In this document: one piece after another, positions 10,891 through 64,000 of the stretch
Position numbering within the stretch: the first letter of the stretch is position 1
Layout: the number at the start of each line of letters is the position of its first letter
DNA from: Kudoa neothunni
Lineage: Eukaryota; Animalia; Cnidaria
Reading direction: 5' to 3'
Assembly (NCBI GenBank): GCA_964304625.1
Contig: OZ199840.1
Span: forward strand, 34,323 to 98,322
Length of the DNA: 64,000 nucleotides
The notes under the pieces: model-generated
What the model saw: only the letters and a program-made list of their open reading frames with translations
Told to the model about the DNA's origin: nothing
The model's database searches: none
Position numbers and translations under genes: made by a program

Positions 10891-10894
10891 TTAA

Positions 10895-13140: not shown

Positions 13141-16100
13141 ATGGTTAAGTATAAATTTTTGAATTGCCTCTTATGTATATAGTGTTTTATTACCGATAAT
13201 GAGTCTTTATTAGTCATTCAAATCGCATTTCTTTGTACGATGGAAAATGCAACGGCGCCCTCTTCTCCATCAATGTCTACTCCATTAGCTACGCTGAATT
13301 ATCAAATTGAATATGATAGTTCTACTACCTCCAATTTAGTTAAGCATACACTTGGTGGAACACATTATGCTACAGGAAAATGTCGTATATTGAAGTCAAA
13401 CGAAGCAGCAAACATGGGTGGTTCGACAACAGCAGCGGCGTATCAAGAAATATCAAGCTGCCCTGGATATATTACCGATAGTAGTAACACAAACTGTGTA
13501 ATTTCTTGTGACAGTCAGAATAACAAAGTTCCATATAATAAACTTTCACCACGGACAAAATATATATACGTATATGATAATAATGATTTCGACACTGCTA
13601 AAGCAGATTATCCTAAAGGTGGAAAAGTGTTTGGTTTGGCCACACGTAATCCAAGTATCTTTAAAGCAATAAATTATATCATAAAATTTAGCATTATTGG
13701 TCAATCCTCAAGTAACAATCTCTACCAATGCTGATAGATTGAAACTCCTAACAAAAACTTGCTCCCCAGTTGCGTGCCCAATCCATTATAAAGACGCACA
13801 ATTCAAGGGGGGTATTGCGGGGCAAACATGCGATACAGGAAGCACAGAGAATGATGTTGAATTTGACCTATTGATTCCTCATTATGAGATGAGATGTGTG
13901 AATTATCCAAGTTTCTTTTATTATATGCCAAATGCATACATGAAGAAAAATATGGCTATTTATGAACCTCAGTATTACGTAACAAAAAAGGAGGGAGCTG
14001 CTAATCAAGTTATTCTTAAATTCACAGATTTAATGTTATCGTCAGAGATATGCGTTTTTCAGTATTAAGGACGGTAAAACTGGTGCAGCTAACTCCGCGT
14101 ATGAATCGAAATGTGGAAATACTGCGGGAAAGTGTTACGCACCTTGTAAAAATGTTGAGCTTACTGTAACAGCAGAAAAAGAAATATATAATGTTCTAAT
14201 TCAAACCAGGAATCACGATCTTTCAAAAACATCTGCTGATTTTGATGGATTTTCCCAAAATAAATTTCGTAATTTATTTTAGTCAATAATTATAATTATT
14301 TTATTATAAATCTTATAGCGATATATGAGACTGGTGATGGTTTGTTGTCTGCTTATACCAAAAATGGTGTATCTTTTGATGGTACATTATTAAACCCCTC
14401 TGCAAGTACAGGTACCAAGTTTTCTACGTGCACGTTAAAGCATTACCCTGCTGACAAAGTCAAACACACGCCTTCAACTACTTCATGTAACGCGGCCACT
14501 AAAAAGAATAGTAGTAGTAGCAGTAGTAGTAGTAGTAGCAGCAGCAGTAGCAGTAGCAGCAGTAGCAGTAGCAGCAGTAGCAGTAGTAGCAGTGGCAGCA
14601 GTAGCAGTAGTAGTAGTAGTAGTGAGGGTGGTGAATGCAAAACTGGTTGCGAAAAATTAGTAATTGAAGGACTATCTCCAGGGAAACCATATATTATCGA
14701 AATTGAACCTAATGGAATCGCAGATCCAGCTTCTTTCAAAGAACAAATACTTATAAGGACAAGTAATAACTAAAAATTTAATATTAACTTAACTAATAAT
14801 ATTTACAAGATAATGAGGTGAATAAAAATTTTCAAGCAACCGCCCCTACTAAAACAGAATCAACAACTACACTAACAGCTATTGGAGGCGAAGCAGAGAC
14901 AAATAAAAATAATGAGCCAAACTGTGAATACTATTTAAGTCCAACTGGGAAAAACACATTTTACACCGCTAAATGTACTGAAACCAATCCCTGCAGAGGG
15001 AGATGTAGAGAATCAATAACTATTGTTGATCTTGAACCAAACACTTCTTACGACGTTAGGGTCATTGCTGATAAGGAGTACAAAGAACACATATATACAA
15101 ATGTTTTAACTAGTATATATATATATATATATATATATTAATTTATTCAACTCAATCTAGATCTGGCAACCTTGAGAATAACTCAAAAATACACTGAACA
15201 AGGATTGGAATTGAATGCACAATTGTCCAAAAAAGTCCCAGAAGCCATTTGCCATTATACAATCCAAATAAAAACAGATGAAAGGTTTGAAGATGTTTAC
15301 GTCTGCGAAGCATCACAGACACCAGCAGCTGCGCCAGAAACTCAAAATACTCCACCAAGCTCACCAGTCGACTCCAATTCTAATCCCGAGCAAGAACAAA
15401 CTGGTACTAGTCAAATTCAAAGTCTAAAATCAGAAGTTAATGGATTAAAAATTGCAAGAGCTGAATCTAATACCCCTACTGAAACTGATACAAATGTTGC
15501 CCCAGCTACAACAGTCGATACAACTGCGAGCCCGGCCAATACAAATACATGCTCCTCATTTCCATTGTGCAGTTCTATTAAATTCGACGACTATGATGCA
15601 AATGAAGAGTATAAAGTGTCTATTACTGCAGTGGGAAAATCAGAGCGAAATGAAATTACTTTAGTAGCTAGTAAAAATATTTTCAATATTATTATTATAT
15701 TTAAAATAAATAGCTGCTCCAAAGGGGAATCCAACAGAAAACGACAAAATAATATATGTGACCATAACAAGGGATGGTGAATCATTTGTTATAGAAAACA
15801 CCCTACCATCTAGTCTCAATGAAAAATCCAAATGTAAGTGGGAATTACGTAACGCGAGTACCAAATCGATAGCAATTATTAAAAAATGCATGAGACGAAA
15901 TGACAATGGATGTAGAACGTACCCTTCATGCAAATCATTCACTATCAGTGGATTAGCAGATGGCAACAATTATCACTTGACTGTGTACAGTTCCACCGAT
16001 AAAACAGTTTATGGGACGGCTACGATTGAGCAAGGTAAAGCATTATTACTTCGAAAATAATTTAAATTGTAACTTTTAGGAGCCAAAAGCAGTTCAAGGT

Positions 16101-16281
16101 TTATTAATTAATATTTTTAACATAAATAAATTTTACATTTAGTTCTAAAACCATGGTCATGTATTAATTTATTGTGTTTTTACAATTTAACTGGTATTGT
16201 TTTAGAATAATTGCAGTAGCCGCTATTGGAGCTATGATCATGGGTGCTATTGGTTTCGTGGTTTTCAAGAAGAAAAAATAA
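13141..16281 (+). CDS. Cys-rich FN3-like type I membrane protein family, copy 2 (one apparent frameshift; poly-Ser expansion)
   Basis: GT-AG introns at 13175-13213, 13646-13691, 14269-14318, 14763-14809, 15113-15160, 15671-15713, 16035-16079, 16099-16142 and 16161-16205. Spliced product has a signal peptide MVKYKFLNCLLFIQIAFLCTMENA, tyrosine-corner motifs (LSPRTKY, LSPGKPY, LEPNTSY, YDANEEY, LADGNNY), TM VIIIAVAAIGAMIMGAIGFVVF and KKKK*. An extra T in the run at 14055-14059 shifts the frame. Confidence 0.85.
14510..14623 (+). repeat. (AGY)n coding microsatellite, about 38 codons of poly-Ser
   Basis: AGT/AGC repeats with a single GGC, in frame within exon 4 of copy 2. Confidence 0.95.
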
Positions 16282-17899
16282 ACGCCCTTATTTACGAATT
16301 ATTACCCTAAAATCCAACTATAGAAATTTATATTATTTTTCTAATGGTGTGATATTTATGAATTGTCGATAATTCAAATTTATCCATACTAGATAAAATA
16401 AAAATATTTTATCTTAGATGTGTTCCAACGTTATTATAAAACTTGATAGGGATGATATGACTCGGATAAAAATGTGGGATTGTTAATAAACTTTTAAAAT
16501 TTTTTTATAATTATTAGAAATTGCTAAAACATAATGAAATATGATATACGCATAATATTTATTTTGTTAAACGAATAAATTATATTAAATTGAATATATT
16601 TATCGAATAATAGTTGTAAACGTTGATTAATCTCCTAAATATTTAGATGTTGTATTCGGTTACTTTTTTAAACTATACACTACATAACGATACTGAAATT
16701 GATGTCAAATATTAATATTATAAAAATTAGATAACGAGATATGATGAATATTCTGATGTTTTAAAAAAATGAGCTCGACTGCTTGTGTATTGGTATCTAG
16801 GATTTCCAAAATTTTGCAGTAAACGCAAACTCACTGACTTAGGAACCATCATAGTGATTTTAGTATTTATTCCAGTTTTTAATGAAATTTTTGGCTATTT
16901 AAAACCTTAAGTTAGATGGAAAATATTAATAAATAAATCAAAAAATTAATTAATTATAGGGTTACTTAATCCCAAAATTAATTTAAAAAAATATCTCAAC
17001 ATAATCGTTTGCAGCTATAAATCTCACACTTAAGTTTTTTAAGTATATTGACTTATTGAATTCTGCAAGAACGCTTCAAAGTGTTCTGATCGTTCCTGAG
17101 TCAAGATTCGATCTTTGTATTTTGATTCAGTTTATAACTACATTCTACATTTCATTTGGCGATTTTTGTTGTAGTTAAACTATAAACGTAAATTATAAAT
17201 AGTTATTCCAACCAAATTAAACGAAAGTGACAATATGACATGTTGCATAATTAATGCAGAATGGTTATAAGAAGACGAATTTTAAACTTATTCAAGATAT
17301 CAAAAACAACATTAATAGAAAATTAAGGTACTTTAAAAATAATGAAAACATTGAGTAAACCACTACAGCGCAGAAATATTTTAGTCAACTTACGAAACCC
17401 TCTGTACGTAGTGTAGATATAATATTTTGATATAACATAGCAAAAGACAATGACAGAGTCTTATATTGAATATGGTAAACACACGATTGATTTCTACATC
17501 GTAGAACATATTACAGTAAGGTATCGGTATAGGGAGGGTTTTTAAAAATGAATAGTAATTTATCACGCAATACTGAGGGGATCGAGTATGCGCGTTATTA
17601 TATTTTTTCATGGAAAAGAGTCAATTTTTTATCTTTTTTCCAGGCCGTATAATTTTATATAAAGTGTTCAATTAGGATTGGTGTGAAATAATTAGGATAG
17701 ATTTTCAAATTGAATGGTTATCCAATAGTATTTATGACCGCTTTTACGTCACATTTCGTAATTATTTGACTTTCTCGATGAAAATCAGCGTCAACGTTGC
17801 ATTTTGTTGATCTTGCGACATTTATATAAGGTTAACTGTACATTTCTTCATGTATAACTTTGACTTACGTCAATTCCACGATCTCATTCGCGTTGGTAT

Positions 17900-18420
17900 G
17901 TAGCAATAGAATAAAATTGAACCGACTGCATTACATACCATAAATTATTGTTTTTTCTGTATGACTAATATTTACATTAAATTCGTCATAGTTTATGTTT
18001 AAAAATGTCTTCCTAAATTAATCGCGCGATTTGATATATCGGATATTTCTCGAAACAATTTCAATAGTTAGCTCGTCACCATTTCCCACGTTGCCTTTAA
18101 AGTGCGAAGACGCTTAAAGACAGTATATTTAAAAATTTTCGTAGAATCATTAAATAGAAACTGATTAACGAATGATTTCCTACACTTTGACTTCAAATCA
18201 TGTGTGGTTTGAAAATCTATTGATTTGGTGCCACTAGTATTCTTAGGAAGAAAGCACATTTCGATATAATTAAATTGATCAAGAATGAGATGTGTTTTTC
18301 CTTTTTATTCATTAAACTGCCTATCTATGTTTTTAACAATTTCAAAGAACAAAGCTGCGGACGTCCAGCTATTTTTTGAAAAAGATAATTTACTGGGAGA
18401 TTAGTGACACCGTAAAAACG
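17900..18420 (-). mobile_element. Decayed pogo/Tigger-type DDE transposase remnant
   Basis: Minus strand WTSAALFFEIVKNIDRQFN..HLILD..FLPKNTS....DFQTTHDLKSKCRK resembles the DDE_1 pattern 'AWMT..F..W...FLPPNTTS..QP.D...K..YR'. Ends approximate. Confidence 0.5.
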
Positions 18421-20656
18421 GGGTGACTCTCTTTTTCGAGAATTTCATTCCCTTCAAATCGATTTTATTTTATAGTGTTATATGTTCATTTGCACAACTG
18501 TTCGTAGTTGAAAGCAATCTTGTCAAAATTAATAATTTATACATTTTTTCGTCCCCGAAAATCTACAGAAACCTTTTAGATCCATTCAAATACATTATCC
18601 ATATCGGCATTCACAACCCCACCATACAATATAATGTTCTTCGAACAGTAATGAAACTTGAAATTTAGAAGCAAATCATTATTGAAGAAAATGATTAATC
18701 AATAGATTTCAGCGTTATATTATACAGATGCATTAAAAAATAACCGATAATTATCCAATGATTAAAAAATTTTTCGCCCAAAATATAATAAAAATTTGAA
18801 TAAAAACCAAAATTTTTTAGACGATTTAAAAATATATCGCCCCATTATACCATTAGGAACTTAGATGCTTTTGAATTCAATAAAAATAAACGTCATATTT
18901 CCTCAATACAATCAATGTTATTCTATAACAATCTAAATAGAAAACCTAAATTGAAGTCCTGCATCTTCTCAGTTAATCCGTATAAATAAATCATAACATC
19001 ATAAGAGAAGTGATTTCCGCGAATGCAAAGAAAACCAGACTCAACAATAAAGGGTGCCAAATTCATAACATTTTCTTCTATTTAAAGATTCTAAAATTAA
19101 GTATCAACGTTTGTTCAAATAATTTTTAAATTTATTTTACTTGAGTTATACCACGTAAACAGGAAAATGAGCCGGCCATGACAACATTAAATTCTTAGAT
19201 AATATTAAATTCTTAAATTTAAAATAGAGAATTAATGATTCCAGAATTAAATAGATAAAATGAAAGCAGTATTAGAATGCATTCAGAAAAAATCCGTTAT
19301 ATCATTATATTACTCATAAAGGATGTGTATGATAAGTAAAATCGTCAAAGACCGTATAAAATAATGTTCAAAAAGTAGATTCTTTCAATATTTAGTTATA
19401 TACGAAACAAATATACATCTGTTATCGACATTATATAAATTTTCGGGTATAATCATCAAATAAAACGAAATATCCCCATAAAATAAACGCTACAATAAAC
19501 TACAAGCCATTATGATAGAAAATAAGTTTTCATTTTATTTGTACAAATATATCGGGAATTAAACGTAAAGCAATCACAAATGTCCTTCCAATATGGCGGA
19601 TAATTCCAAAAATCAACAAATAAGATTAAAAAAACGAAGCAAACCCCCAAGTTTCCCCTTTTTAAAAGAAAGGTGCATTTTATATTCCCGAAAATTAACA
19701 TATAATTTTAAGGCAGCGGCTATTGGCACGATAAAATTTAATCCTAATCCATGTGTACGCATACGGATTTTTTAATCTCAACAACCATTTAAAAGCGGTT
19801 CATAGATTTAATATTTTAAAATAAGTTATATTTAATTATAGTCAAGACGAGTGTCAACTGAATATTATTTAACATCCCAATAGCCCCTTCATAATTAATT
19901 TCAACTAATTCTTTACAACTAAATCACAACTTTAACTCAATTACAAATTTTACAAGAATTTTAACCTTCAACTTTATCAAGAAAGGAAGTAAAACTTCAT
20001 TTTTTTATTTGAACATTTTAACTTTGTGAGTGTTTTAATCATATAATTACATTTTTAAATACATCTATATTATAATAATATAAATAATGTTTATTTGATT
20101 TTATAAAAATGAATTATGAAAATTTGTTTGTTTTATATCATGAACAATATAGATGAATATCTAATTCTACGGCAAATATAAAAAAGACTAAAAGTATCCT
20201 GCAATTAAATTTAGAATTTTGAGCTTTCAGTAAAACTAAAAAACATACACATACACATACATTAATAAGTTTATTCTAAAAATGAATCTAAGAATAAAAT
20301 ATAATTTGATTCGTATACTATAAGGGACAGATTAATCCTTGTTGCCATTTGACACCATGTGTGTATCTTTCAAATTTTTGAAATAACTGCTCTAATTTTA
20401 GGATATTTTATATAAAATTATTTAAAATTAAACATAATGAGCGAAAAATATTTTTTGGTCACTGAATTAAATTCGTAGTTCAAGGGGTTACTTATAAAAG
20501 TATGGAATTAGTTCCAAAAGAAAGCGCACATTTCAATATATAACAAAAACTAGTTGTGACAATTAAAGAACAGAGATATATAATACCACCAAGTGCCATT
20601 TGATTTGTTTATAAAGCAAAATTTTAGCTAATATCATTTGACCGCATCTCAATTAA

Positions 20657-20908
20657 CCCTCAGAGGACAGTCTTGGGTTTCAAGAGCCCTCCTTTCCGTT
20701 ATTTTTAAAATAAATTTTATTAATAAATTTGTTGTATTTTATGTATTTTTGACAGAATTTCGCCTAATTAAAAATAAATATTACTTATCGACTAATGTAA
20801 TAAAATGGGAAAAAATTCCGACGAAATTACTCAAAATGTAACCAACTACTAACTTAACAACAAAATGATATAAAGGTGTAGCATAGGGCTATGGTTGTCC
20901 TCAAAGGG
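20657..20908. mobile_element. piggyBac-like MITE upstream of Chk1
   Basis: TTAA + CCCTCAGAGGACA ... TGTCCTCAAAGGG + TTTAA; about 250 bp, non-coding. Confidence 0.6.
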
Positions 20909-21332
20909 TTTAAATAACCTTAACTTCAATTAAGCATAACTTTAAGTGTATTTGTATTTATCACCAGCATTAATAAAGCTATAAAAAAAGAATATACACA
21001 GCCAATTTATAATTTTAAAAAAACTTGATGGTAACGTAGATTATCCACAGCAACTTCAAATAAGCTTCGAGTATTTATCGGATTATAGTTAAAGCTTTCC
21101 TATGATTAAAAATCATGTTGACTTAATCTGATTAGCGGAACAATTAAAATAAATTTATATATTAAATCCGGATTAGTAATAAACTAAACTATTAATCAAA
21201 AATAAAAAGGAATATTCAAACGAACTGCTAAGTTTTTTGTTTATTGCGGAAAAGGGGTTGGTAATGGATGTTTTGCGCGCATATCATTGTTGATTGTCAT
21301 TAGTGTGCTTATCAACAGCAAACTAATTGGTT

Positions 21333-23531
21333 ATGCTGGAAGAACATTTTTATGGTAATTGGTATTTTATTGACAACCTGGGTGAAGGTTCATTTGGAAA
21401 GTAATATCCTTTCGAACGCACAGGCGAATCACTCACACACGATTGGATTTTAGTGTGAGATTGGCTAAAGACAAAGAAACCAACGATTTGGTAGCAGTTA
21501 AAATAGTTGATCTCTCGAAAATTAAGGAGATCAAAGATATTGAAAGGGAGGTGATCATATTAAATTTGAACACACAAGAAATTCCAATATTTTTCATTTA
21601 GATATGTATTCTAAAATTGATTAATCATAGCAGAATTGTTCGTTATTATGGTCATCGCAAAGAATCTACGCTTTACTATATATTTTTTGAATACCTCACA
21701 GGCGGAGAATTATTTAATTGGATAGGTATGGGATTGTGGTAGTTCTTCGAATACCACTAAAATATTTAATATAATCGCACGATTATATTCTTGATAACTA
21801 TAGATCCTGGTTATCCTATGGAGAATTCTCTTTGTTTCAGATTTTCATCTCAAATATTAGAGGCTATAGTAATCAGTTTCAACAAGTGTTGAGGTTGTAA
21901 TATGTTGTTTAGAATTATTTGCATTTAGTTGGAGTAGCACACAGAGATCTAAAATTAGAAAACGTCCTTTTGGATGAAAATAGTAACTTTAATTGGCGAA
22001 AAAATTTATTCAATATAAAAATAATTTAAATTATTATTTTAGATAATGTTAAATTGATCGATTTTGGATTGTCAACAATATTCCGATATAAAGGGAAAGA
22101 ACGTTTTCTTGCTAAGATGTGTGGTTCAATGCCTTATACAGCTCCCGAGATTCTGTTATCAAAAGAATATCGTGCCCAACCAGCCGATATATGGTCATTT
22201 GGAGTGATATTATTTGCACTATTTACTGGCGGTGATTATCTTCATTTGGCTGTTATCAATCAACTCCAAATATTATGAGTATTATTTTAGAGTTGCCATG
22301 GGATGCAGCTACTGACGAGTCTGCGGAATTTCGTCGTTTTAAAGTTGGCCAGCAACCTGCGGAATCTTGGGGTCGTTTAGATCAATATAAGCTAGGTTTA
22401 GATTTTCATTTAATTTTAAGGCGAGTTTTATTATACTTGATTAGATTTAATTACGCATTTATTTTGCGTAAGTCCAATTCAACGCTACACATACAAAGAT
22501 GTGTGTGAGAGTTCGTGGTACAGATTGTGAGTTTTTGTTTGGATTTAAATGCACCTATTAATTTTGATTTATTAAGCTCCCAAAAGATGGAATCCAACAT
22601 AGGTAAATATATGTGCGCTTGTAATTACACAATGCTAATTATTTTTCTGAGTATAGCAATTGCAACAACACAATCTAGTGGAGATATTAACAGTTCGAAG
22701 TATTTTATTCTCGAATAGACTAGCCTGAATTAGAGTTATTGAATTAATTTATTATGTTACAGGTATGTGACAAATAGTCAAGCGCCTAGCAATCCAAGTA
22801 GCGGCGGAGTCACTACATGTCTATCTCAGATGAATCCAACTACTGAATCGATTTCACTACTTTCCAATCATAGTCGATTCCCCAAGCAGAACGACATTGG
22901 AAATAATGCAGTGGATGCATTTTCTCAACCTATCAAGGCTGATGATTTGGTGGTGAGCCAAATGACCCAGGCCACTCAAACTTGTCAATCTACCCAGGTA
23001 AATTCTCATCGACTTTATAAGTGTTATCGCATTTCAATATATATTAATTTGAAATATGTAGAAAACGATCTTGAACAATGTGGCTAGAAAAATGACTCGT
23101 TTCTATGTCAAAAATGCTTCGGATGAATTTCTCAAACAAAGCATTGTGGAAATTCTCGACAGTTATGTGCTACAATGGACACTTTTAAATGAATTTGGCG
23201 TATGGATTATATTCATTTATTATGACTTTGCCTAATTGATTAACTATTTTATTAAGTTTTCTGTAAATGCGATCGATCGTCGTCGAAATCCATTGAATTT
23301 TAAAATCGAACTTCGACCTGTGTCATTACCGCCCTTAACATCTTCGAGCGAAACTAATCCGCCACCAGATAGCATTATTTTGGTGAATATAAAAAGAAAC
23401 AAAGTAAATTAAATATGAAATTTACAAAATTGATTAACCTATTATAGGGTGATGGAATCGAATTTAAAAAATTCTATCGACACATCAAGAATGACCTCAA
23501 TCGATTGGTTACATGTGTGGATGTGATTTAG
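21333..23531 (+). CDS. CHK1: Checkpoint kinase 1 (Ser/Thr kinase), multi-exon
   Basis: Spliced motifs LGEGSFG, VAVK, EYLTGGELF, HRDLKLEN, IDFGLSTIFRYKGKERFLAKMCGSMPYTAPE and ELPWD. An SQ/TQ cluster (FSQP, SQMTQATQ) and Chk1 C-terminal motifs RKMTRF, DRRRNPLNFK and GDGIEFKKFY follow. Stop TAG at 23529-23531. Start codon is the best guess. Confidence 0.9.
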
Positions 23532-23625
23532 GTTTAGACTGTTTTCAATTTGTCAGCTTAGTTATTGTTTGTAAGTGTTTATTTGAGAGAGTCATTTTTT
23601 ATAATTCAACCCATAAAAGTAAAAA

Positions 23626-29099: not shown

Positions 29100-29137
<38 letters not shown>

Positions 29138-31431: not shown

Positions 31432-32201
31432 TGGTGCAATTTTACAATAAGCTTGGGCCTGCGCACAAGGCGGGTTTATAGATTAGTTTAGTTTGTGTAG
31501 GTACTAATTCAATTTTTAGATGAAATATATATATTATTGATTGAGAGAATTTTTTTGAATATCTAATGTTTCGATTGAGATGTATTTTGATTGTAAATTT
31601 TTGTTATACGTTCTTATATATGTTGAGTTTCTGTTTAATATTTTTTTTGAAGGTGTATTTGGAAAATATGAACTTAATTTTAAGGTCATTTATGCGTGTT
31701 CAGGGAAGATTAATAAATTCATTAACTTTAATATTGAAATATGAAGGGGGCGGATTAAATATAGTTGAACTTTCCAGATTATTTATGAAATTTAAAAAAT
31801 TATTTTCATAAATATAATTAATTAAGGGGATAATTGATAGATACAGCGTTGAATATAACAAGGAGAAATAAAATAAAGGTCTATTATAAAATGATAATTA
31901 TGTTCTTATCAGTTTTGTTAGTATATTTATATTGAGGTGATTAATTATAATTAATATTTCTTAGATTGATTGTAATTTTTAGGACGAACTTTAGGATTTT
32001 GCTATTTTATACCTTAGTGGTATTATAATCACGTGAGGAAGAGAAATATTCATAAAAGACTAAAAATTTAATTATACTATACTATTAAAAAACAAAAATA
32101 GTTATTTATAAATAAAAATGTTTTGAAAATATAACACTATTAGCTGTATAATCTAAATTTCTATGGTTAGATTTTAGGGTAATAATTCATAAATATAGGG
32201 T

Positions 32202-35597: not shown

Positions 35598-35685
35598 TCC
35601 CAGGTATAAATAATATGAATAATTGGTAAAAATATTTATTCTTCTTCATTACGAATAAATAATCATCTAGATAAATATAAATGTT

Positions 35686-48725: not shown

Positions 48726-48972
48726 ATTTCTTAGATTGATTGTAATTTTTAGGACGAATTTTAGGATTTTGATATTTTATACCTTAGTGGTATTATAACC
48801 ATGTGGGGAAGAGAAATATTAATAAAAGACTAAAAATTTAATTATACTATATTATTAAAAAACAATAATAGTTATTTTAAAATAAAAAGGTTTTGAAAAT
48901 ATAACACTATTAGCTGTATAATCTAAATTTCTATGGTTAGATTTTAGGGTAATAATTCGTAAATATGAGCGT

Positions 48973-51900: not shown

Positions 51901-52000
51901 TCATACAAAAGAATGCGATTTGCATGACTAATAAAAATTCATGATTGATAATAAAAAAATAGATACATAAGAGGCAAAGCAAAAATTTATCTTTAACCAT
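48973..52000 (-). pseudogene. Cys-rich FN3-like type I membrane protein family, copy 5 (several single-base frameshifts in exons 2-3)
   Basis: Leader identical to copy 4. Frame breaks near 51760, 51572, 51215-51235 and 51093. Ends FVVFRKKK*. Confidence 0.8.
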
Positions 52001-52786
52001 TATAAAAGGTAAAGAAAAACAACAAATTGAACTGAATAAATGAATACTATAATAAGCCGATACATGTATCGAATAAAAAGCCTATTGAAACGACTATATA
52101 CTTAAAGTCTTAATTCTTATTTACTATTAAATTAATAATTATCGAATTTATTATAGTTATTAAAATGCTAAAAATTTCAAATTGAAACAATTATTTTATT
52201 ATATAGCTCAAATAAATTCGATAATACTTATTATATCTCGTTCACTCCGCCATAATAAATCCAAGGAAAAAATTAATCGATTGGACCAACTCTTACTGGA
52301 TTAAAAAATGAGTTAAATAATGTTAAACTTCATGAACTATATTTACATTGACGTCATGTAAGGTCATCCTAGGTATAAATAATATGAATAATTGGTAAAA
52401 ATATTTATTCGTATTCATTACGAATAAATCAATCATCTAGATAGATACAAATGTTAGACGAGTTGTGTTACGTTTGTGTGTCAATATTGAGATCATTATA
52501 AATTTTGAAATTTTTTACTGTAAACATTATTTTCATTAAATATATTTGTAAAAACCTATAATTTTAAGTAATTATAGATCAATATGTTGCAATCTTAATT
52601 TCTAACCAACATACATACAAGATAAAGTAATTAAGTCATATTTTTCCTTACCAGAATTATCTATAGTCCCCCACTTGGTTTTTGGGGATCTCTTTTATAA
52701 TATTTTGGTTAATTATATCCATAAGCATTTTGAAAAAAAATTATATAGCCAGAAATGGAAGAAATCCAATTTTTATAGAAATCGAA

Positions 52787-54330
52787 TGGAGAAAGATTCC
52801 ACGCGCGTGCGCGAATGCAAAAAATACGTCAACCGTAATTTTATTTTAATTTCCAATCATACGTTTTAGATATAGCTTCTACATAAAATGTACCATAATA
52901 GGAACTATAATTCGAGCTTATCTCCTTCAATTTTTCAATTTTTATTTCCGTCTTTTTGTTCTGATTTGTTGTATTTGGATTACATAGCTGATTCATAATT
53001 TCCTGTTCAATCGAACTTTGTTGCTCTTTTAGATTTGTGATGAATGTGACTAATCCTGAATGTGATTGTTCAAAGCGGGAATAAAAGTGGCGATTGAATA
53101 TTTCTGCGTTGTTAGATGTTAGCTTTACATTGTTCAGCACTCTTTGGTACGCATTCCATGATTCAATGGGATACTTTTTGCTTCTAATAAAGTTTTTTTC
53201 AAAGTATATTAAGAATAATTGAAGATTAGGAATCTGAAATTTTTCAGCAGAAATACACAATTTTTTTAATTCAGCTTCAACAAAATCTTTAGGAACAAAT
53301 GCGGGTGACATAACGCAATTAATGAAAACTTTAAAATCTAGGTCATTTTGGTATTCCTCGGAAAGTCCAAGTGATTAAATGTTTCGGTAATTACATTGTC
53401 CGAAATGAAACAAACAAAATTGTACATCATGTTTTGATGCTTTTTCAAAAGCATTATATGCTGCTACTTCAAAGTCAATAATTATTGATTTCGGTAACTC
53501 CATATTACCCTTTTCCTTGATTATTTCAATAATCTTCGTGTAATTTTTCTCAGACTTGTCCGACATTAAAACAAAAGCTAGTGGAAAAACCCTGTTGAAT
53601 ACATTACCGTGAATAGCATATAACTGAAAAAAATCCTTCGGCGCAACGTTAAAGTTCCATCCGCAATCAAAAAATCTGAATTTTTCAGATGTAAAAGGTT
53701 TTTCTCTTTAGAAAACATGATTATTCTGTTTTCGTCATCAGAACCTGAATTGAACAAACAAAAGGATTCATCTCTCAGAGTCTTAATTTCATTACAAACA
53801 CTTGTCGCTGAATCAATTTGAATATTGTTTCTTTTATTAAAATTTCTTATGTTTTTGTATACAAAAGATTTAGGAATAATCGGAAATTCATTAATGTTTT
53901 CTTCGCTGGTTGCAATACTATACACTTTGTTTGTAGGATGTAAAGTAGTTTCTGCTAAGAGTTTTATTTTATTGTGGAATATTTTTTTATTTTTGTCCTC
54001 CTCCGATACGGAGCGTGATTGTGAAATCCAATTTTTTCAATGTTTTCCGTATCATCAAGAGTTGTTATTCTTAATCTTCCTCTACACTGTCTAACTTGAC
54101 ACCTCCAATATTGAATTTCATTTTTTTGCGAATCTTGACGTAAAAACTAATCTTCATAAAGCATCGTGTCGGTATTTTTGTTAGTCTTAAGTATAATAAT
54201 ATCTTTATTTGGATTTCCACTCACCCTGGGTCCTTTAGCCACTCTTGTGCAGTTAATATGCGTTAAAAATGGGGTTTTATCCATGTTTGCACGTGCGCGA
54301 GCAATCTTTCTCCACCGGCAAAATTTCTCC
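52787..54330 (-). mobile_element. FLYWCH-type MULE (Mutator-like) transposon, near-complete transposase with a few lesions
   Basis: YWRCQVRQCRGRL...HNH (FLYWCH), LIADGT, IIIDFEVAAYNAF, FCLFHFGQC and TSNNAEIFN. Inverted ends TGGAGAAAGATT / AATCTTTCTCCA. Absent from the paralogous copy 4 flank. Confidence 0.85.
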
Positions 54331-54866
54331 ATACCATTTTGATGAATTATATAGCCATAAATTGAAGAAATCCTATTTTTATAGAAATATCAAAGTATTG
54401 TCGTATGGTTGGAAAATAAAAATGAAGTTGTTTATCGGATCCTATTTAATCTTGCGATTTCCGACGTTATTATATGCACATGTAATAACTTCCATGATAT
54501 TCTATCATAATTTTTCCTTTCATATTAATTCCATTTTTATAAATATAAATTGAATTTTACTTTAATTGAGATGGTTAACATTATTTCACAATCCGTTTAT
54601 ACACTTACCTAAATAGCTTGGTCTAATTTATTTGTCACATCACATTCCATGTATTGTACTAATTAATATTATAAAGTTTTTTTTAAATATTACTATATCG
54701 AGCTCTTTTATATTCGAAAAATAATTATTTATTTTTTAAGAAATCCATGAAAAGATCAATAAACTGGATACTCCAAATAATTTTAATCCAGTTAAGTATT
54801 AAAACATAATTTCCAAATTTATGCGTACAAAATAACGTTTTCATTTTAAATTAAAATTGTGCTAAT

Positions 54867-57800
54867 TATAAAGCCTGTGACTCATGAAAAACATCCCTTT
54901 CTGCATCTTTTTTGTCTCTAATTTTTAACGATTCTTATTGATAAAATAAATAAATATAGAAAGGAAAAATTTAGGGTATACCAAAATAACTTCTAAATTT
55001 TAACCAAATCCGATTTCGAGCAAAATCGTCCCCACGTGTAATCTCCCTGTTGTTTACAAAAACTTGCCAATCTCATTATTTGTCACATATTTTAATATAT
55101 TCGCTATATTAAATCGCCTAAATGATTTTCTGGCATTAAGAAATAAACGTATTTGCTAAATCCGCGTTTATTAACACGTGCTAGTCCAAAATGGAGTCGT
55201 TAAGTTATAAAGTCGATGGTGACTTTTATTTACTCATTAATGATTAAGAAAAGTTATTCCATGTACGTGTTGCTAAAGGTTATCTTTACAAAGCTCCAAC
55301 TCGCTGTAGAAATTACAGGAATTTCGATTGCTTCATCCTTAGAAAGCTCAAATTAAATGATGTCAGGCCGATAACTAAACTGTCCGCCAGTATTGGCATA
55401 GTATACGACTACGAAAATTCGGCCTCATATCGTTCTAATTTTTTATTACTTTATTATAGGTCGTTATTATTAGATTATAAAAATGGAAATGCCAAAAATT
55501 TGTTTAAAATTTAAAATTCTACCGCTTTCTCATCATTCTACCTTAATCCTCATTATGTTAGTGTAAGTTGAATTATGTCAACGTTCTTTAATTTTAAAAA
55601 GTTTTTTTAAATTAATCTAATAGCTCGTTTGGATTCTTATAAAAATTAAATATATTGAAGAATTTTTTAATGTCATTTTGAGTTGCACTCAATCATCCTC
55701 TCTACATCTTAAGTGAATTTGAGGTATGAAGAAAGCTTACAATAGCAGGTAAAAGTCATCTATAATTTTTTTAATTTATATATTTTTTATGACAATTTTA
55801 TTGTTTATTTGTGAAGTTATTGAATTATTTTTGCTGAAAAATTCGTTGGAGTTTTTGTAATTATAATATTTTTCATCATTTAATGTTGTATTCGGTAGAT
55901 TATCATTAGATAAAAATCTTACGCCATAATTTATGTTATTTTGTCGTACGATAGTACGAAACCTATTCAAGGTCATGAATTCGAAATTCATTATAATTCT
56001 TATGTTTTAGTTTATTCGTAGTATATAACATAACACATTCAATGTGTGATTTTTTTTTAAATAATATAATCCCTCGAAAATCATTGAGCTTTAAAATTTT
56101 CATTTTATATAGATTTTTTCAATGATTATAAATGTAACAGTTTTATTATTCTTGATTTATTATTCATTTTTTCATAATCAGTTTGATTAAATCATTATTT
56201 CAATATATAAATTAATTAAATTAATTATTAACATTTTGTCGAATTTATTTAGCAAATATAAACATTATTTAATAATTTTAATAATATTTATTTATGTTTT
56301 CAAAAAGATTGTTTAATAATTGGAACTTATTTCCATATATTTAGCGGACCCATTCTTCTTGTAAATAGCTCTCAAATTCGATATCACTTACTCCTCTTCT
56401 GATTCCCAATATTTTAAGTTTCAATTTGCCTCAACAGGGTTCTATCGTATTTGAGTGCTACCGTTGATACAATAGCGTAATGAATGATTAACAGTAATGT
56501 GATTGTAACCCAATTCATCCTATTTTTGATAGGCTTTCCATTCGTCACAGTAGATCATGGTACCCTTGATAACTTCGTTTTGACTTATAGGAAGTAATGT
56601 TTTCTTTATTTCATCTTTCAACCTTAAAATATCTGAACTCCTTAAGTTGTCTTTTTCCGTGGCTATCGACAGAGCATAAGCATAGACCAAAGACCCACGG
56701 ACCATCAATCCTATTACCGTATTTTACGCGACGCGAACAATGAGTTAATTAGTTTTTAGAGAGTAAGATTAAAATCATATATACACATTCCCTCCTCGGA
56801 TAATTCTTCCAGCATTTGGTTGATATTCACTGATACTACTATTTAACTAAAAATAGTCTAGTTAACCTTTTCGCATGTAATACTCGATACATCGGCTTTA
56901 TGAGACAAGATTTCCTTATTTACAGAATACTACCACTTATCTCCTTTAAGATATTTACCCATGTTATTATTTCTTTTCCCTTGAAGTAAGCTTTCGTCGA
57001 TTTCGACCACAAATCCTTCTCCGCCAAACGGTCTCCTATCCCTAAAGCCGCCCGAACAAATATATCGTACATTTTTAAACCAGTTTATCCCCGTAATTTT
57101 GGATATATGTACCAATGAGCATGTGGATTCTATTTTATTATTCATAAGCCAATAATAAATTACCTTCATTATCTGTTTTACGGTTATTTTAGAAATTTTT
57201 TTCCGACACCTCTCGAAAAGAAAGATCTTAAAGGGTGAAGACTTGGTTTTACAGCTATTACTTATGGAAAAAGTATAAAATCGTTTTATTTTATTACTCT
57301 CTACATACATGAATAGTTTTGTATTTATCAGTGCCAACAGAAAGATAGTCCTCATTAATAGTGATTTCTTTCCTATTTTTTCTTCTGGAAACGTAGAACT
57401 AATTGTGACATCTACAATTTCTACATCTCGTTGGAATTCTATTTATGAGATTTTTCGAACAAAGAAAATCGCATAGAAGATCGCTATTATTAATCAACAC
57501 AAAAAACTGATCGTCACTATCATCATTAACCATAATGAATATATACGATTTAAAGAGCTCTCATTACACTCCAACTATATCTCAAACAATGAAATACTAA
57601 AATAATATGATATTTAAAATTGTTAACCTCAAATAAAAGTTTAAAAAGCTAAATTAAGAAGTTCTATTGAATTGAATGTAAGTAAAAGCGCACGAATTAA
57701 TTCACTGAAAGTCACAGCTGTCCCAAAACACATAATGAGGATTAAGGTCGAATATTGAGCAAACAGAAGAATTGTAAATTTAAAAAAAATTTGTGTCTCC

Positions 57801-60061
57801 GTTATTTTTTAAAATCAAATAATAACGATCTGTAACAAAATCGTAAAAAATGAGAACGATATGAGGTCGAATTTTCGTAGCCGTATGTTATCAATACAAG
57901 TCCGTCTATGACAGAAATAACATCGATTATTCCTTCACATACCTATGTAAAAAGTAATATTTTATCTCAATTCGTTGCTTTAAATACAATTGGTGTAAAA
58001 CTATTCTCCCCTCCCCCAAAATGGAACATTTTTTCAAACTCTCTTATACGCGTCCCGTCCCAAAACCCAACATTGATATGATGTTTTTAAAATATAATAT
58101 CGCTGGTGTATAGATGAAACTATTATAACTACAATTAAAAAAGATTAGTTAAGTATGTCTACAGTTTTAGCGTGGTTCAAAAAATCCGACAACTCTGCAA
58201 ATCACCCTTCGAGAACAGAAACAAAATTGGTGGATAAGGTTTCATTGTAGAAATTGATGAATGCCTCCTTCACGAAAGAAGAAAATAAAATCGGGGTCGA
58301 ATTCTTAACGGAGATGCATGGAAAACGTCTCAAAATAAAGAATTCTTAGAGTCAAGTACTGAATCTCGAATTTGATATAATGAATTATATAACGTATTTC
58401 TTTTACTTAGTAGATGCCGACGATGGAGGTGTTAGCGATTATTTCCCTTCAGAAGTTGAATTTTTTGATAAATCCTTCGACAGTATTTTATGATGTCACC
58501 ATTTTATTAAATAACGTAAATAGAAGCGGAATTCGGCGACACTTTTGCCCATAATCGAAAGAGAAATCCACAAAGGATCAACCTTAGCCAGTGATGAATG
58601 GTCCACCAATAATGGTACACGTGAACTTGGCTATGATCATGTTAAGGTCAACCACTCGAAGGGATACGTGCAGAATGGCCCCAATACAAATACTATCGAA
58701 CGATGCCGGGGGAGGCTAAAAACAAAATTTCTTCGCGTGAAACGGGGAGTATCATTCTCAAATTTTGTGGAATACCTTATTGAAGAATGATACCAATTTA
58801 TCATGGGCGAAGAAATAAATCTTTTCAACAACTTTTTAAGAACAATTTATCTTTGTTTTAATTAGATTATTGTAAATTTGTTTTTAAAAATATTCATATT
58901 TAAGTCTTTTTTTCTATGTTCAAATGTCGATGTTAACATAAATGGATAAATAAACTATTCCAATACGATAGGTTAGTTATTTAAGAATTCATTATATAAA
59001 CTAATATTTACCACAACATTTTCTGAATTTAATTAGGGCAAAATTTTAATAAGTGAACAATTTTTATATAAAAATAATTAAATGCTTATGTACACTTAGG
59101 AAATCAACCAGCTGAATAACGTCATTTAAAAATATCACAGAAAATTTTGTATAATGGAAGAATTTTTCTTTTAAATTCACTAACATGGAGATTTGGAAAT
59201 CTGATATGGATTATTTGACGAAAGATTCAAAAAATTATATAGTTCATTTATGACACTTGAATAATTCTATATTCGCATCCTCGAAAAAATATTATATTTA
59301 CATAATATCAGTTATTAAGTGTTATTATAAAATGTTTTTCCAACGTTTCAGATTTTTTAAATTTACTCAAATAGAGTAGTCGAGAATCTTGTGTATGACA
59401 CTTTATTATTAATATTGGAATAATCTACATAACCTTAAAAATCGTCAATTTTATATTTGGTATAATTGCTGTATTATATTAATTATTTCATGACAAACTT
59501 AACAGTTTATAATTTTTTTTAGAAGATAATGGACACATTAAAATGTCAACTTTTAAAGTTAAATAATATTTAAATATTTCATGATCGCATTTTCATACAA
59601 ATGCAGTCATTTAAATTTATTGAGGAAATATAAATTTACAAAAAAAAATTAAAAACTAAACATGATGTTTTAGCATAATAAATCACTATGAGATTTACAT
59701 TTCATCGATTGGATATGAGCAAATTGATTTGCTCAGTGAGTAAAATGTAACACCATTTTAATGAGTATTTAAATTATCTTTTTGGTCAAATAATTATCTT
59801 AAAAATAATTTAAGTGATTTAATATAACGAATATGTTAAAATATGCGACAAATGATGAAATTCGCTAATTTTTGTAAACAAATGGGAGATTACACGTAGG
59901 GACGATTTTGATCAAAGTGAGATATGGTTAAAATTTAGAAGTTATTTTTTATACCTAAATTTTTCCCTTCTATATTTATTTATTTTATTAATAAGAATCG
60001 TAAAAAATTAGAGACAACAAAGATGCGCAAAGGGGTGTTTTTAGGAGTCGCAGTCTTTATA
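54867..60061 (+). mobile_element. Outer Merlin/ISXO2(IS1595)-like element with ~260-bp terminal inverted repeats
   Basis: 54867-55129 is an imperfect inverted copy of ~59802-60061. The plus-strand transposase relic (~58000-58830) reads GFIVEIDECLL, LPIIEREIHKGSTLASDEW, YDHVKVNHS and NTNTIERC. Confidence 0.8.
55389..57898 (-). mobile_element. Inner Merlin/ISXO2-like element nested in the outer one
   Basis: About 170-bp IRs (55390-55558 vs 57728-57897) and an imperfect 8-bp TSD TGTCCGCC / AGTCCGTC. Minus-strand relic reads FGGEGFVVEIDESLLQGKR, VIKGTMIYCDEWKAY and LGYNHITVNH. Confidence 0.8.
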
Positions 60062-61688: not shown

Positions 61689-64000
61689 TTATTTTTTCTT
61701 CTTGAAAACCACGAAACCAATAGCACCCATGATCATAGCTCCAATAGCGGCTACTGCAATTATTCTAAAACAATACCAGTTAAATTGTAAGAACACAATA
61801 AATTAATACATGACCATGGTTTTAGAACTAAATACAAAATTTATTTATTTTAAAAATATTAATTAATAAACCTTGAACTGCTTTTTTGCTCCTAAAAGTT
61901 ACAATTTAAATTATTTTCGAAGTAATAATGCTTTACTTGCTCAATCGTAGCCGTCCCATAAACTGTTTTATCGGTGGAACTGTACACAGTCAAATGATAA
62001 TTGTTGCCATCTGCTAATCCACTGATAGTGAATGATTTGCATGGGGGGAATCTTTTACATCCTTTATCCCTTGGACTCATGCATTTTTTAATAATTGCTA
62101 TCGATTTGGTACTCGCGTTACGTAATTCCCATTTACATTTGGATTTTTCATTAAGACTAGATGGTAGGGTGTTTTCTATAACAAATGAATCACCATCCCT
62201 TGTTATTGTTACATATATTATTTTGTCGTTTTCTGTGGGATTCCCCTTTGGAGCAGCTATTTATTTTAAATATTACATATAATAATAATAATATCGAAAA
62301 TATTTTTACTAGCTACTAAAGTAATTTCATTTCTCTCTGATTTTCCCACTGCAGTAATAGACACTTTATACTCTTCATTTGCATCATAGTCGTTGAATTT
62401 AATAGAGCTGCACAATGGAAACGAAGAGCATGTGTTTGAATTGACCGGGCTCGCAGTTGTATCGACTGTCGTAGTTGGAGTGACATCTGTATCAGTTTCA
62501 ATTTGGGTATTAGATTCAGATCTTGCAATTTTTAATCCATTAACTTCTGATTTTAGACTTTGAATTTTACTAGTACCAGTTTGTGGTTGGTCGGTATTAG
62601 AATTGGATTCGGCTGGTGAGCTTGGTGGAGTATTTTGAGTTTCTGGTGCAGCTGCCGGTGCCTGTGATGCTTCGCAGACGTAAACATCTTCAAACCCGTC
62701 ATCTTTTTTTATTTGGATTGTATAATGACAAATGGCTTCTGGGACTTTTTTGGACAATTGTGCATTTAATTCCAATCCTTGCTCAGTGTATTTTTGAGTT
62801 ATTCTCAAGGTCGCCAGATCTAGATTGAGTTGAATAAGTTAATATTTTGATATACATATATACTAGTTGTAACATTTTCATATATGTGTTCCTTGTAATC
62901 CTTATCAGCAATGACCTTAACGTCGTAAGAAGTATTTGGTTCAAGATCAACAATAGTTATTGATTCTCTACATCTTCCTCTACAGGGGTTAGTTTCAGTA
63001 CATTTAGCGGTGGTGAAAATGTATTTTTCCCAGTTGGACTTATATAATACTCACAGTTTGGTTCTTCATTTTTATTTGTCCTCTGGTTCGCCTCCAATAG
63101 CAGTTAGTGTAGTTCTAGATTCTGTCATAGCAGGGGCAGTTTCTTGGAAATTTTTATCTTCCGTTTTATCTATTAATGATTATTAGTTTTAATGCTTTTT
63201 AATTTCAAATTATTACTTGTCCATATCAATATTTGTTCGTTTAAGGAAGTTGGATTGCTGTTACCAGTTAATGCGACTTCAAGAATATAAGGTTTTCCTG
63301 CAGTTAATCCTTCAATTACTAATTTTTCGCAGCTAGCTTTACAATCATTATTATTAGTACTTCTGTAATTTTCGCCACATTGAGTGATAGATGGATCTTT
63401 TTTAATATTGTCAGCTGGGTAATGTTTTAAAGTGCAACCAGTAAACTGTGTGCCTGATCCTGGCTTAAAAACTGCTGCGTCAAAAGATACACCTTTATTG
63501 GTATAATCTGACAACAAACCGTTTCCAGTCTCCGATATTGCTAAAAAATTTATAAAAGTTAATATTGACTAAAATAAATTACGAAATTTATTTTGAGAAA
63601 ACCCATCTAATTCACTAATAGAAATTTTGAAAGATCGTGATTTCTGGTTTGAATTAGAACATTATATATTTCTTTTTCTGCAGTTAGAGTAAGCTCAACG
63701 TCTTTGCATGGTGCGTAACACTTTCCTGCAGTATTTCCACAGTTTGATTCGAATTGTTGGCTATTTTCTGCAGATGTACCATCTTTAATACCAAAAACAC
63801 AGATCTCAGATGATAGTGTTAAATCTGTGAATTTAAGAACAACTTGATTAGGAGCTCCTGTCTTTTTAGTCACATAATACTGAGGTTCATAAATAGCCAT
63901 ATTTTTCTTCATATATTCGTTTGGCATATGATAAAAAAAACTTGGATAATTCTGACACCTCATCTCATAATGAGGAACTAGTGTATCAAACTCCACAGTG
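61689..64000 (-). CDS. Cys-rich FN3-like type I membrane protein family, copy 6 (5' part beyond window; a few single-base indels)
   Basis: Exon 3 (partial) to exon 10 are colinear with the other copies. Ends FVVFKKKK*. Apparent indels near 63625, 62960 and at the exon-7 donor (~61937). Confidence 0.8.

What the first reader, a model, noticed from the sequence alone, without database searches (positions are those of the whole stretch)
13141..64000. The copies are segmental mosaics: incongruent block sharing points to ongoing gene conversion
Seen, with groupings changing along the gene. 5' flank: {1,2} vs {3,4,5}. In exon 2, copy 5 alternates donors: TVPKSTATSTPT (=4), ANSFGSTSAAGL.EIENCPG (=3), KQDSKVPYDK (=4), VFDSTDT.AAKA (=3); copy 4 has Y.EI.SCPGYIT like copy 2. 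Exon 4 start LLSVYTKQGLT.DG.FLNPSS: {1,3}. Loop SGGSTNDCKTDC: {3,5}. GLTAGKPYILE: {5,6}. Intron 4: {1,5,6} vs {2,3,4}. Exon 6 SEIN.LK {1,3,4} vs SEVNGLK {2,5,6}. Exon 7 loop MRRNDNGCRTYPS {1,2,3} vs MSPRDKGCKRFPP {4,5,6}. Intron 8 is identical in copies 2 and 5. No single duplication tree explains this, and exchange crosses between the inverted arrays. Inference: combinatorial diversification from a limited set of dimorphic cassettes.
Basis: partly seen in the sequence, partly recalled or inferred. Interest (0 to 1): 0.82.

Follow-up and report, generated by a model that had tools for sequence, protein, structure and literature searches.

The report
Recombining surface-protein genes in Kudoa
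Six neighbouring copies of an undescribed membrane-protein gene in the fish-muscle parasite Kudoa neothunni are true patchworks of one another, the mark of gene conversion between sister genes; the process is well known, but this family and this animal lineage are new for it.

Summary
The window holds six copies of a 9-exon gene (about 870 aa: signal peptide, FN3-like beta-sandwich modules, one membrane anchor). All 25 possible splits of six sequences occur and are spatially clustered. PHI z = -24 (0 of 2000 permutations), 22 shared tracts pass a GENECONV-type global test, and segment trees conflict at bootstrap 95-100. Introns and silent sites take part, so it is recombination, not convergence.

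The genome matches the published Kudoa neothunni assembly (Myxozoa; HiFi, about 7x coverage). The family has at least 150 confirmed loci (484 candidates), no Pfam match and only 17 unnamed relatives among 1.84 billion proteins.

Corrections:
- "Dimorphic cassettes" fits only the 3' half. The 5' blocks have 9-16 variants in 18 copies, and many donors lie outside the window.
- "Ongoing" is untested.
- Copy 1 lies outside the stated coordinates.
- Frameshifts in copies 1, 2 and 5 are consensus indel errors.
- Window 1-58.5 kb dovetails with C3:2.79-2.85 Mb, probably an unpurged haplotype.

No long reads were available, so no mosaic was checked on a spanning molecule. The scan noted the same patchwork in other clusters of this genome (s1-682521, followed up).

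The parts
444..3494 (+). Copy 1 (c1), ATG to stop, 9 exons. It lies outside the finding's stated start. In this assembly it carries many 1-base indels.
   Evidence: Its 99.9% twin at C3:2.79 Mb (L015) has an intact ORF. The two differ by 3 substitutions but 29 gap openings, so the frameshifts are consensus errors near a contig end.
13141..16281 (+). Copy 2 (c2), 9 exons, with a long poly-serine insert in exon 4. It has one frameshift in exon 3 in this assembly.
   Evidence: Its twin L016 is intact and differs by 1 substitution and 3 gaps.
32202..35231 (-). Copy 3 (c3). Intact ORF of 872 aa: signal peptide, ectodomain, C-terminal membrane helix and a four-residue basic tail. Used as the reference gene model.
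   Evidence: All eight introns are GT..AG, 39-107 nt.
42043..45078 (-). Copy 4 (c4). Intact ORF of 872 aa.
48973..52000 (-). Exon 2 alternates between c4-like and c3-like blocks. The assembly shows frame changes in exons 2-3.
   Evidence: Read-derived contigs of runs X1-X4 cover every bin at 95% identity or more. They differ from the assembly by 1-base indels at 51765, 51214, 51234, 51239 and 51092, where the frame changes.
61689..64000 (-). Copy 6 (c6): exons 9 back to part of exon 3. The gene continues to window-equivalent 64699 (fetched as L005).
1..31970 (.). Block that is 99.95% identical (16 substitutions) to C3:2789422-2821400. It carries c1 and c2. The first 8 kb has 45 gap openings. 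The block begins directly after a 199-N scaffold gap.
31970..58533 (.). Continuation of the same collinear match to C3:2821400-2846404, now diverged: 95-96% in intergenic DNA and 82-90% in the three genes. It ends 25 bp before an N gap in the other locus, so the two contig ends dovetail.

Best explanation
The six genes belong to a large Kudoa-restricted family of type I membrane proteins. Each has a signal peptide, cysteine-bearing beta-sandwich modules of FN3 type, mostly one or two per phase-1 exon, a Thr/Pro-rich linker, one membrane helix and a short basic tail.

The members exchange short stretches of DNA by homologous recombination between non-allelic copies, mainly non-reciprocal gene conversion. 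Tracts are typically 90-290 bp. Each gene ends up as a patchwork of about 8-17 pieces whose nearest relatives are different paralogues, in either orientation, within the same cluster or in another cluster on the same chromosome.

Exchange is frequent enough in the 3' half to keep it nearly uniform (concerted evolution). In the 5', membrane-distal half it reshuffles old, deeply diverged variants into new combinations.

Shown here: the mosaic structure, its statistical support, the part played by silent sites and introns, and purifying selection on the protein.

Inferred: that the mechanism is conversion rather than double crossover, that the protein sits on the parasite surface, and that the shuffling serves host interaction or immune evasion.
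For: Incongruence and clustering of splits. PHI z = -24, and -14.6 on non-coding sites alone. 22 globally significant shared tracts, some between + and - oriented genes. Conflicting segment trees at UFboot 95-100, with AU rejection of other segments' trees.

Copying-model painting of 16 paralogues gives a median of 11.5 segments per gene, against 4.5 after column shuffling. The median internal segment is 158 bp. 163 of 172 switch points lie inside exons, so this is not exon shuffling at introns.

81-87% of the differences between any two copies have both states present in other paralogues. Private changes are only about 0.5-1% per copy.

Silent divergence falls from dS 0.80-0.89 in exons 2-4 to 0.12-0.18 in exons 6-7, and intron divergence falls from 21-32% to 9-12%. 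Without homogenising exchange in the 3' half, silent sites of one gene should be of one age.

Perfect tracts sit inside diverged genes: 273 bp for c4-c5 and 152 bp for c4-c6.

dN/dS is 0.18-0.55 and the splice sites are conserved, so the genes are functional.

The assembly comes from PacBio HiFi single-molecule reads with no short-read polishing step described (PMC12239612). That process cannot make 100-bp chimeras between copies that are about 10% diverged. The + + - - - gene order is seen independently in the second locus, C3:2.79-2.85 Mb.
Against: No spanning long read was inspected. The only runs served were Logan contigs of the same sample, in pieces of 100-480 nt.

Parasite coverage was only about 7x and the consensus has indel errors.

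Site-permutation nulls ignore regional rate differences, and the alignment is uncertain in the most variable loops.

Non-reciprocity, timing and any link to expression were not tested. There is no RNA evidence.

No GC-biased conversion signal was found.
Confidence: 0.85

Rival explanations
1. Assembly artefact: the mosaics are chimeric consensus sequences produced by collapsing or mis-polishing near-identical repeats in a low-coverage assembly.
For: Coverage was about 7x (PMC12239612). The first 8 kb of the contig has 45 gap openings against its twin. Frameshifts in c1, c2 and c5 are consensus errors. The first 58.5 kb of the contig dovetails with another contig end.
Against: These errors are 1-base indels, not substitutions: 16 substitutions in 31 kb. 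HiFi reads are single molecules, and copies 10-20% apart are not collapsed by hifiasm. Mosaic blocks of 30-330 bp are far below read length. Read-derived k-mer contigs cover every bin of c5, and no substitutions are listed in its variable exons 2-3 apart from one at 51923, though 86 further rows were not shown. The same patchwork is seen in 12 further paralogues from other contigs.
Confidence: 0.04
2. Reciprocal unequal crossing-over and meiotic recombination in tandem arrays, followed by duplication and loss, built the mosaics. Non-reciprocal conversion is not needed.
For: The genes lie in tandem arrays with shared flanks. [quoted passage not shown] A near-identical 31-kb block ends at the 3' edge of c3, which shows that large-scale exchange or duplication also occurs.
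Against: Most tracts are short (median 158 bp) and embedded in a different background on both sides, so each would need two close crossovers. Tracts are shared between genes in opposite orientation, where a single crossover would invert the interval. Copy spacing and gene length stay regular.
Confidence: 0.08
3. Convergent or parallel substitution under selection at a few hypervariable loops mimics block sharing.
For: The variable blocks lie in cysteine-bounded loops of the ectodomain, where selection could favour recurrent states.
Against: Non-coding sites alone give PHI z = -14.6. Intron 4 has two haplotypes that differ at 11-16 of 47 positions, with the same kind of grouping. Silent sites show the same gradient. 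dN/dS is below 1 in every exon.
Confidence: 0.02

Closest known systems
Plasmodium falciparum var genes (ectopic recombination giving mosaic genes)
   Same: A large clustered family of single-pass surface proteins. Short shared blocks switch partners along the gene. A conserved membrane-proximal or 3' part sits next to a hypervariable distal part. Most diversity is reshuffled standing variation. This comparison rests on my own knowledge of the var literature.
   Different: The proteins are unrelated (FN3-like modules, not DBL/CIDR). There are nine exons instead of two. The host is a cnidarian animal parasite living in fish muscle. No evidence of mutually exclusive expression. Subtelomeric position is not established here.
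Trypanosoma brucei VSG and Babesia bovis ves1 segmental gene conversion
   Same: Mosaic genes assembled from several donors by short conversion tracts.
   Different: Those systems copy into a dedicated expression site, often from pseudogene archives. Here no expression site is known, and the apparent pseudogenes are at least partly assembly errors.
Candidate variant-surface families reported in the myxozoan Sphaerospora molnari (bioRxiv 10.64898/2026.02.11.705288)
   Same: A myxozoan with duplicated membrane-protein families proposed to serve immune evasion. Those authors point to contingency genes near chromosome ends.
   Different: Those families are described as VSP-like (over 10% Cys, CXXC motifs), RIFIN/STEVOR-like and ETRAMP-like, with 10-27 genes each. 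The Kudoa family has 3.4% Cys, no CXXC, FN3-like modules and at least 150 loci. That paper does not mention gene conversion.
Concerted evolution of tandem multigene families in animals
   Same: Homogenisation of one part of the gene by conversion, with low silent divergence in the exchanged part.
   Different: Here homogenisation covers only the 3' half. In the 5' half exchange creates new combinations instead of uniformity.

Membership tests
Multigene family diversified by inter-paralogue gene conversion | Many paralogues in clusters | tested here: met
   Six copies in the window. At least 150 exon-3 matches at E < 1e-49, out of 484 candidates, on all three chromosomes.
Multigene family diversified by inter-paralogue gene conversion | Phylogenetic signal changes along the gene, in spatial blocks, beyond chance | tested here: met
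Multigene family diversified by inter-paralogue gene conversion | Blocks include silent sites and introns, so they are not due to selection on the protein | tested here: met
   PHI on non-coding sites, intron 4 haplotypes, dS gradient.
Multigene family diversified by inter-paralogue gene conversion | Mosaics present on single DNA molecules or in independent isolates | tested here: inconclusive
   Only short Logan contigs of the source sample were available. They agree with c5 but do not span it.
Multigene family diversified by inter-paralogue gene conversion | Non-reciprocal transfer (donor unchanged) | not testable with these tools
   Needs parent and offspring sequences, or population sequences.
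Antigenic-variation system (var / VSG / ves1 type) | Product exposed on the parasite or host-cell surface | tested here: inconclusive
   An N-terminal hydrophobic leader and one C-terminal membrane helix with a four-residue basic tail can be read from the c3 model. No localisation data.
Antigenic-variation system (var / VSG / ves1 type) | Mutually exclusive expression and switching during infection | not testable with these tools
   No RNA run holds the locus.
Antigenic-variation system (var / VSG / ves1 type) | Archive of silent pseudogene donors | tested here: not met
   The twins of c1 and c2 are intact. The frame changes in c5 coincide with indels absent from read contigs. Splice sites are conserved in all 18 copies examined.
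Antigenic-variation system (var / VSG / ves1 type) | Subtelomeric location | tested here: inconclusive
   The window is 34 kb from the start of scaffold C3. That end has no (TAAACC)n telomere, a scaffold gap precedes the window, and the contig dovetails with C3:2.85 Mb. Family clusters are both terminal and internal.
Fibronectin type III domain (Pfam PF00041) | Sequence match above the Pfam cut-off | tested here: not met
   Exon 7 gives E = 0.14 and 12.8 bits against a cut-off of 25. The other exons give no match.
Fibronectin type III domain (Pfam PF00041) | Seven-strand beta-sandwich fold | tested here: inconclusive
   The AlphaFold2 model of exon 3 has pLDDT 73 and is almost all beta-strand (two short helices). 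Foldseek's best hits are IL-17RA and CD45 d1-d2 at E about 1e-3. VIA-align gives Z 6.0-6.7 and rmsd about 3 A over about 80 residues to FN3 domains of LepR, gp130 and fibronectin. That Z range is in the tool's grey zone.
Giardia-type VSP (as claimed for S. molnari) | More than 10% cysteine with repeated CXXC or CXC motifs | tested here: not met
   3.2-3.5% Cys and no CXXC or CXC in seven intact members.

The most novel reading that the evidence does not exclude
A cnidarian (animal) parasite runs a protozoan-style contingency system. About 150-480 FN3-like surface-protein genes are continually re-assorted by segmental gene conversion.

If the two dovetailing contigs are the two haplotypes of one locus, the two alleles of the array within a single infection already differ by 10-19% in the genes. 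The adjoining 31 kb differs by only 0.05%.
Probability: 0.2. Interest if true: 0.8.

Novelty: new member of a known kind. Interest (0 to 1): 0.55.

Why it matters
Myxozoans are animals reduced to a few cells. They cause economically important fish diseases; Kudoa neothunni is linked to post-mortem softening of tuna flesh. How they persist in immunocompetent hosts is largely unknown.

A family that may make up several percent of the gene set appears neither in the genome paper's text nor in Pfam. It is visibly kept diverse by recombination, which makes it a concrete candidate for the host-interface repertoire. It would also be an independent evolution, inside Metazoa, of the strategy known from Plasmodium, Trypanosoma, Babesia and Pneumocystis.

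There is a practical point as well. This low-coverage assembly contains consensus indels and probably an unpurged haplotype at this locus. Anyone annotating the family should know this.

Tried and rejected
- Pfam on four exons and on ten intergenic ORFs: nothing usable.
- Rfam on the window: nothing.
- Word-index protein search with exon 3: nothing, but the tool's length filter excludes full-length kin.
- ESM Atlas by features: only scores of 0.82 or below, no lead.
- Exact look-up of the alpha-tubulin to name the organism: not in the collection. The organism was identified instead from the scan's notes plus two papers and confirmed by assembly size, scaffold N50 and the single (TAAACC)n end.
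- Contig C4 was checked as a possible mitochondrial genome. The first 10 kb has no tRNAs, as in other Kudoa. Not pursued.
- GC-biased conversion: no GC3 or intron GC difference between the homogenised and variable halves.
- 'Pseudogene archive' reading: rejected.
- Exon shuffling at introns: rejected, since 95% of switch points lie inside exons.
I repeated the step with coordinates only.
- The spliced protein was joined only inside my own scripts, to check the reading frame. Those used exon 3 by reference.
- I did not build corrected versions of the frameshifted copies.
- A first iqtree run failed on a thread setting and was rerun.
Full report
**What is in the window**

A self-comparison finds six copies of a 3.2-kb unit. 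Two are on the + strand: c1, ATG to stop 444-3494, and c2, 13141-16281. Four are on the - strand: c3 35231-32202, c4 45078-42043, c5 52000-48973, and c6 from 61689 running past the window end to 64699.

Reading c3 by hand gave a 9-exon model with eight GT..AG introns of 39-107 nt. It encodes an open 872-aa product with a hydrophobic leader, a long ectodomain, a Thr/Pro-rich linker in exon 6, one C-terminal membrane helix and a four-residue basic tail. Copy c4 is intact under the same model.

**The organism**

The genome has 40.26 Mb in three scaffolds (17.15, 12.04 and 11.05 Mb) plus an 18-kb contig. Earlier notes of this scan called it a probable myxozoan. A preprint on Sphaerospora molnari pointed to a three-chromosome Kudoa neothunni assembly.

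That assembly is described by Weber, Paulini and Blaxter 2025 (PMC12239612). It is 40.2 Mb with scaffold N50 12.0 Mb, three chromosomes plus a circular mitochondrial contig, and a (TAAACC)n telomere at a single chromosome end. It was built with hifiasm-meta from PacBio HiFi reads of an infected yellowfin tuna, at a parasite k-mer coverage of about 7. It was scaffolded with Hi-C and purged of 'remaining haplotypic variation'. Here (TAAACC)n occurs only at the right end of C2. I take the identification as secure. The paper's main text has no hit for 'gene famil', 'paralog', 'surface', 'orphan' or 'lineage-specific', and mentions gene conversion only as GC-biased conversion.

**Checking the observation**

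In a six-way alignment, the pairwise identity of a given pair swings between about 65% and 100% along the gene, and the nearest neighbour keeps changing.

Of 488 two-state informative sites, all 25 possible bipartitions of six sequences are seen, and they come in runs:
- 12|3456 in the 5' flank
- 156|234 in intron 4 (nine sites in a row)
- 1234|56 in late exon 4
- 123|456 in the exon 7 loop
- 1235|46 and 1246|35 in the 3' flank

The PHI test gives z = -24 for the gene, -22.7 for coding sites and -14.6 for non-coding sites alone, each with 0 of 2000 permutations as low.

A GENECONV-type scan looks for maximal identical runs over polymorphic sites, with site permutation and a global maximum as the null. 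It finds 22 tracts with global p < 0.05, 33-327 bp long. Seven pairs join a + with a - gene.

ML trees of twelve segments carry mutually exclusive clades at UFboot 95-100, and AU tests reject most trees of other segments:
- (c3,c5) in late exon 2 and in the 3' flank
- (c5,c6) in late exon 3 and exon 4
- (c3,c4) in intron 7 to exon 9
- (c4,c6) in the 3' flank
- {c2,c3,c4} around intron 4

One detail is off: intron 8 of copies 2 and 5 differs at 2 of 107 positions under my bounds.

**Widening the sample**

I fetched twelve more close paralogues from the same chromosome. In a copying model, each of 16 genes is best explained by 8-17 segments (median 11.5). After shuffling the columns the median is 4.5. 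Internal segments have a median of 158 bp (IQR 90-292).

Many best donors of c3-c6 lie outside the window. 163 of 172 switch points fall inside exons (86% expected from length), so this is not exon shuffling at introns.

Between any two copies, 81-87% of differences have both states present in other paralogues. Private substitutions amount to only about 0.5-1% per gene. Most of the diversity is therefore reshuffled standing variation.

**A gradient that points to the mechanism**

| Region | dS | Intron divergence |
|---|---|---|
| Exons 2-4 / introns 1-4 | 0.80-0.89 | 21-32% |
| Exon 5 | 0.35 | – |
| Exons 6-7 / introns 5-8 | 0.12-0.18 | 9-12% |

dN/dS is 0.18-0.55 throughout.

Silent sites of one gene should be equally old. 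The contrast means the 3' half is being homogenised by exchange (concerted evolution), while in the 5' half old variants persist and are recombined.

This matches the block census among 18 copies. The exon 6 and exon 7 blocks have two major forms. The exon 2 and exon 4 blocks have 9-16 forms. 'Dimorphic cassettes' is thus right for the membrane-proximal part only.

**What the protein is**

- Pfam gives nothing above threshold (fn3 at E = 0.14 for exon 7).
- A profile of exon 3 from 22 paralogues has eight conserved cysteines (seven invariant, one nearly so). Against 1.84 billion representative proteins it finds only 17 hits. All those looked up (10 of the 17) are unnamed singletons on short ENA or Logan contigs, and all 17 are 24-51% identical to Kudoa members. 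The family is lineage-restricted and effectively unannotated.
- The AlphaFold2 model of exon 3 (pLDDT 73) is almost all beta-strand, with two short helices. Foldseek's best matches are two-domain FN3-type ectodomains, IL-17RA and CD45 d1-d2, at E about 1e-3.
- The wide structural search gives Z 6.0-6.7 to FN3 domains for residues about 80-193. This is consistent with an FN3-like sandwich but lies in the tool's grey zone.
- Cysteine content is 3.4% with no CXXC, so this is not the VSP-like family reported for S. molnari.

**Quality of the sequence, and an unexpected duplicate**

The window begins immediately after a 199-N scaffold gap. Window 1-37396 matches C3:2789422-2826792, and at lower stringency the collinear match continues to window 58533 / C3:2846404, which is 25 bp before an N gap there. 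The start of one contig thus overlaps the end of another.

Up to window position about 31970, the two copies differ by only 16 substitutions (99.95%). They also differ by 59 indels, mostly single bases next to short runs of the same base, and 45 of them fall in the first 8 kb.

From the 3' edge of the c3 repeat unit onward, identity drops to 95-96% in intergenic DNA and 82-90% in the three positional gene pairs.

The twins of c1 and c2 (L015, L016) have intact reading frames. c1 has many frameshifts and c2 has one. These 'pseudogenes' are consensus errors at a thinly covered contig end.

For c5, contigs built independently from the reads of four runs of the source sample cover every bin. All four runs show 1-base indels at 51214, 51234 and 51239, and two runs each show them at 51765 and 51092. 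All lie where the frame changes in the assembly.

I favour, at roughly 60%, that the dovetail is an unpurged second haplotype of one locus whose scaffold placement is then wrong. The alternative is a real dispersed duplication whose left 31 kb was copied or homogenised very recently. Either way, the second locus independently shows the + + - - - gene order. Either way, genes diverge two to four times faster than the DNA between them, which is the reverse of the usual pattern and is what targeted exchange predicts.

**What could not be done**

Only Logan contigs of the source sample were served, in pieces of 100-480 nt. No long read spanning a gene with its flanks could be inspected, and no independent isolate or RNA run holds the locus.

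The argument against a chimeric-consensus artefact therefore rests on three things: the nature of HiFi data, the indel-only error pattern, and the recurrence of the pattern in paralogues from other contigs. 'Ongoing' conversion is inferred from perfect tracts of 150-330 bp inside genes that otherwise differ by 10-20%. It was not observed.

**Verdict**

Recombination between paralogues, mainly short-tract gene conversion, is the best explanation. The mechanism is of a known kind. What is new is the family and the host lineage, a cnidarian animal parasite.

Other clusters of this genome were flagged for the same patchwork by the scan. One of them was followed up with the same conclusion (s1-682521).

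Noticed in passing
window 1-58533 vs G000:C3:2789422-2846404: The start of the contig holding the window overlaps collinearly with the end of another contig 2.75 Mb away on the same scaffold. Identity is 99.95% for 31 kb, then 82-96%. Both ends abut N gaps. This is probably an unpurged haplotype or a misplaced contig, and otherwise a very recent 31-kb duplication bounded at the 3' edge of gene c3.
   Followed up: partly
window 1-8000; c5 exons 2-3 (51092-51765): Consensus indel errors: 45 gap openings against the twin copy in the first 8 kb, and 1-base indels in c5 that read-derived contigs do not share. The apparent frameshifts in c1, c2 and c5 should not be read as pseudogenes.
   Followed up: yes
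window 14319-14762 (c2 exon 4): A long poly-serine run sits inside the cysteine-bounded loop of exon 4. It is five residues (15 nt) shorter than in the otherwise identical twin L016. This is either microsatellite-like length change or another consensus error.
   Followed up: no
window 5494-6581, 8342-9455, 17512-18268: Dispersed repeats between the gene copies. Many copies at 78-86% identity lie on the chromosomes (seen on C1 and C3 for the first, C3 for the second, C2 for the third). No Pfam domain was found in the intergenic ORFs tested. They look like decayed mobile elements.
   Followed up: partly
window 36602-37495 and 46347-47242; 45814-46113 and 54345-54644: Upstream and intergenic segments are also duplicated between neighbouring units at 90-98% identity. 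For c3, c4 and c5 the repeat unit is therefore larger than the gene.
   Followed up: no
G000:C3:1-600 and G000:C2:12039536-12040071: The (TAAACC)n telomere repeat is present only at the right end of C2. The start of C3, 34 kb before the window, has none, so 'subtelomeric' is not established for this cluster.
   Followed up: yes
L031 (G000:C3:1878712-1880061): The best tubulin match (the only long uninterrupted alpha-tubulin-like ORF) is intronless. By my own reading it is unusually divergent for an animal and lacks the usual acidic C-terminal tail ending in tyrosine, in line with the fast protein evolution reported for myxozoans.
   Followed up: no
5' flanks of the copies (about 540 bp upstream of each ATG): There are two very different upstream types, only 41-57% alike: c1 and c2 against c3-c6. 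L017, on the - strand of the second locus, is the best donor (98.6%) for the part of c2 from just upstream of the ATG into exon 2. Promoter type may therefore not simply follow orientation.
   Followed up: partly
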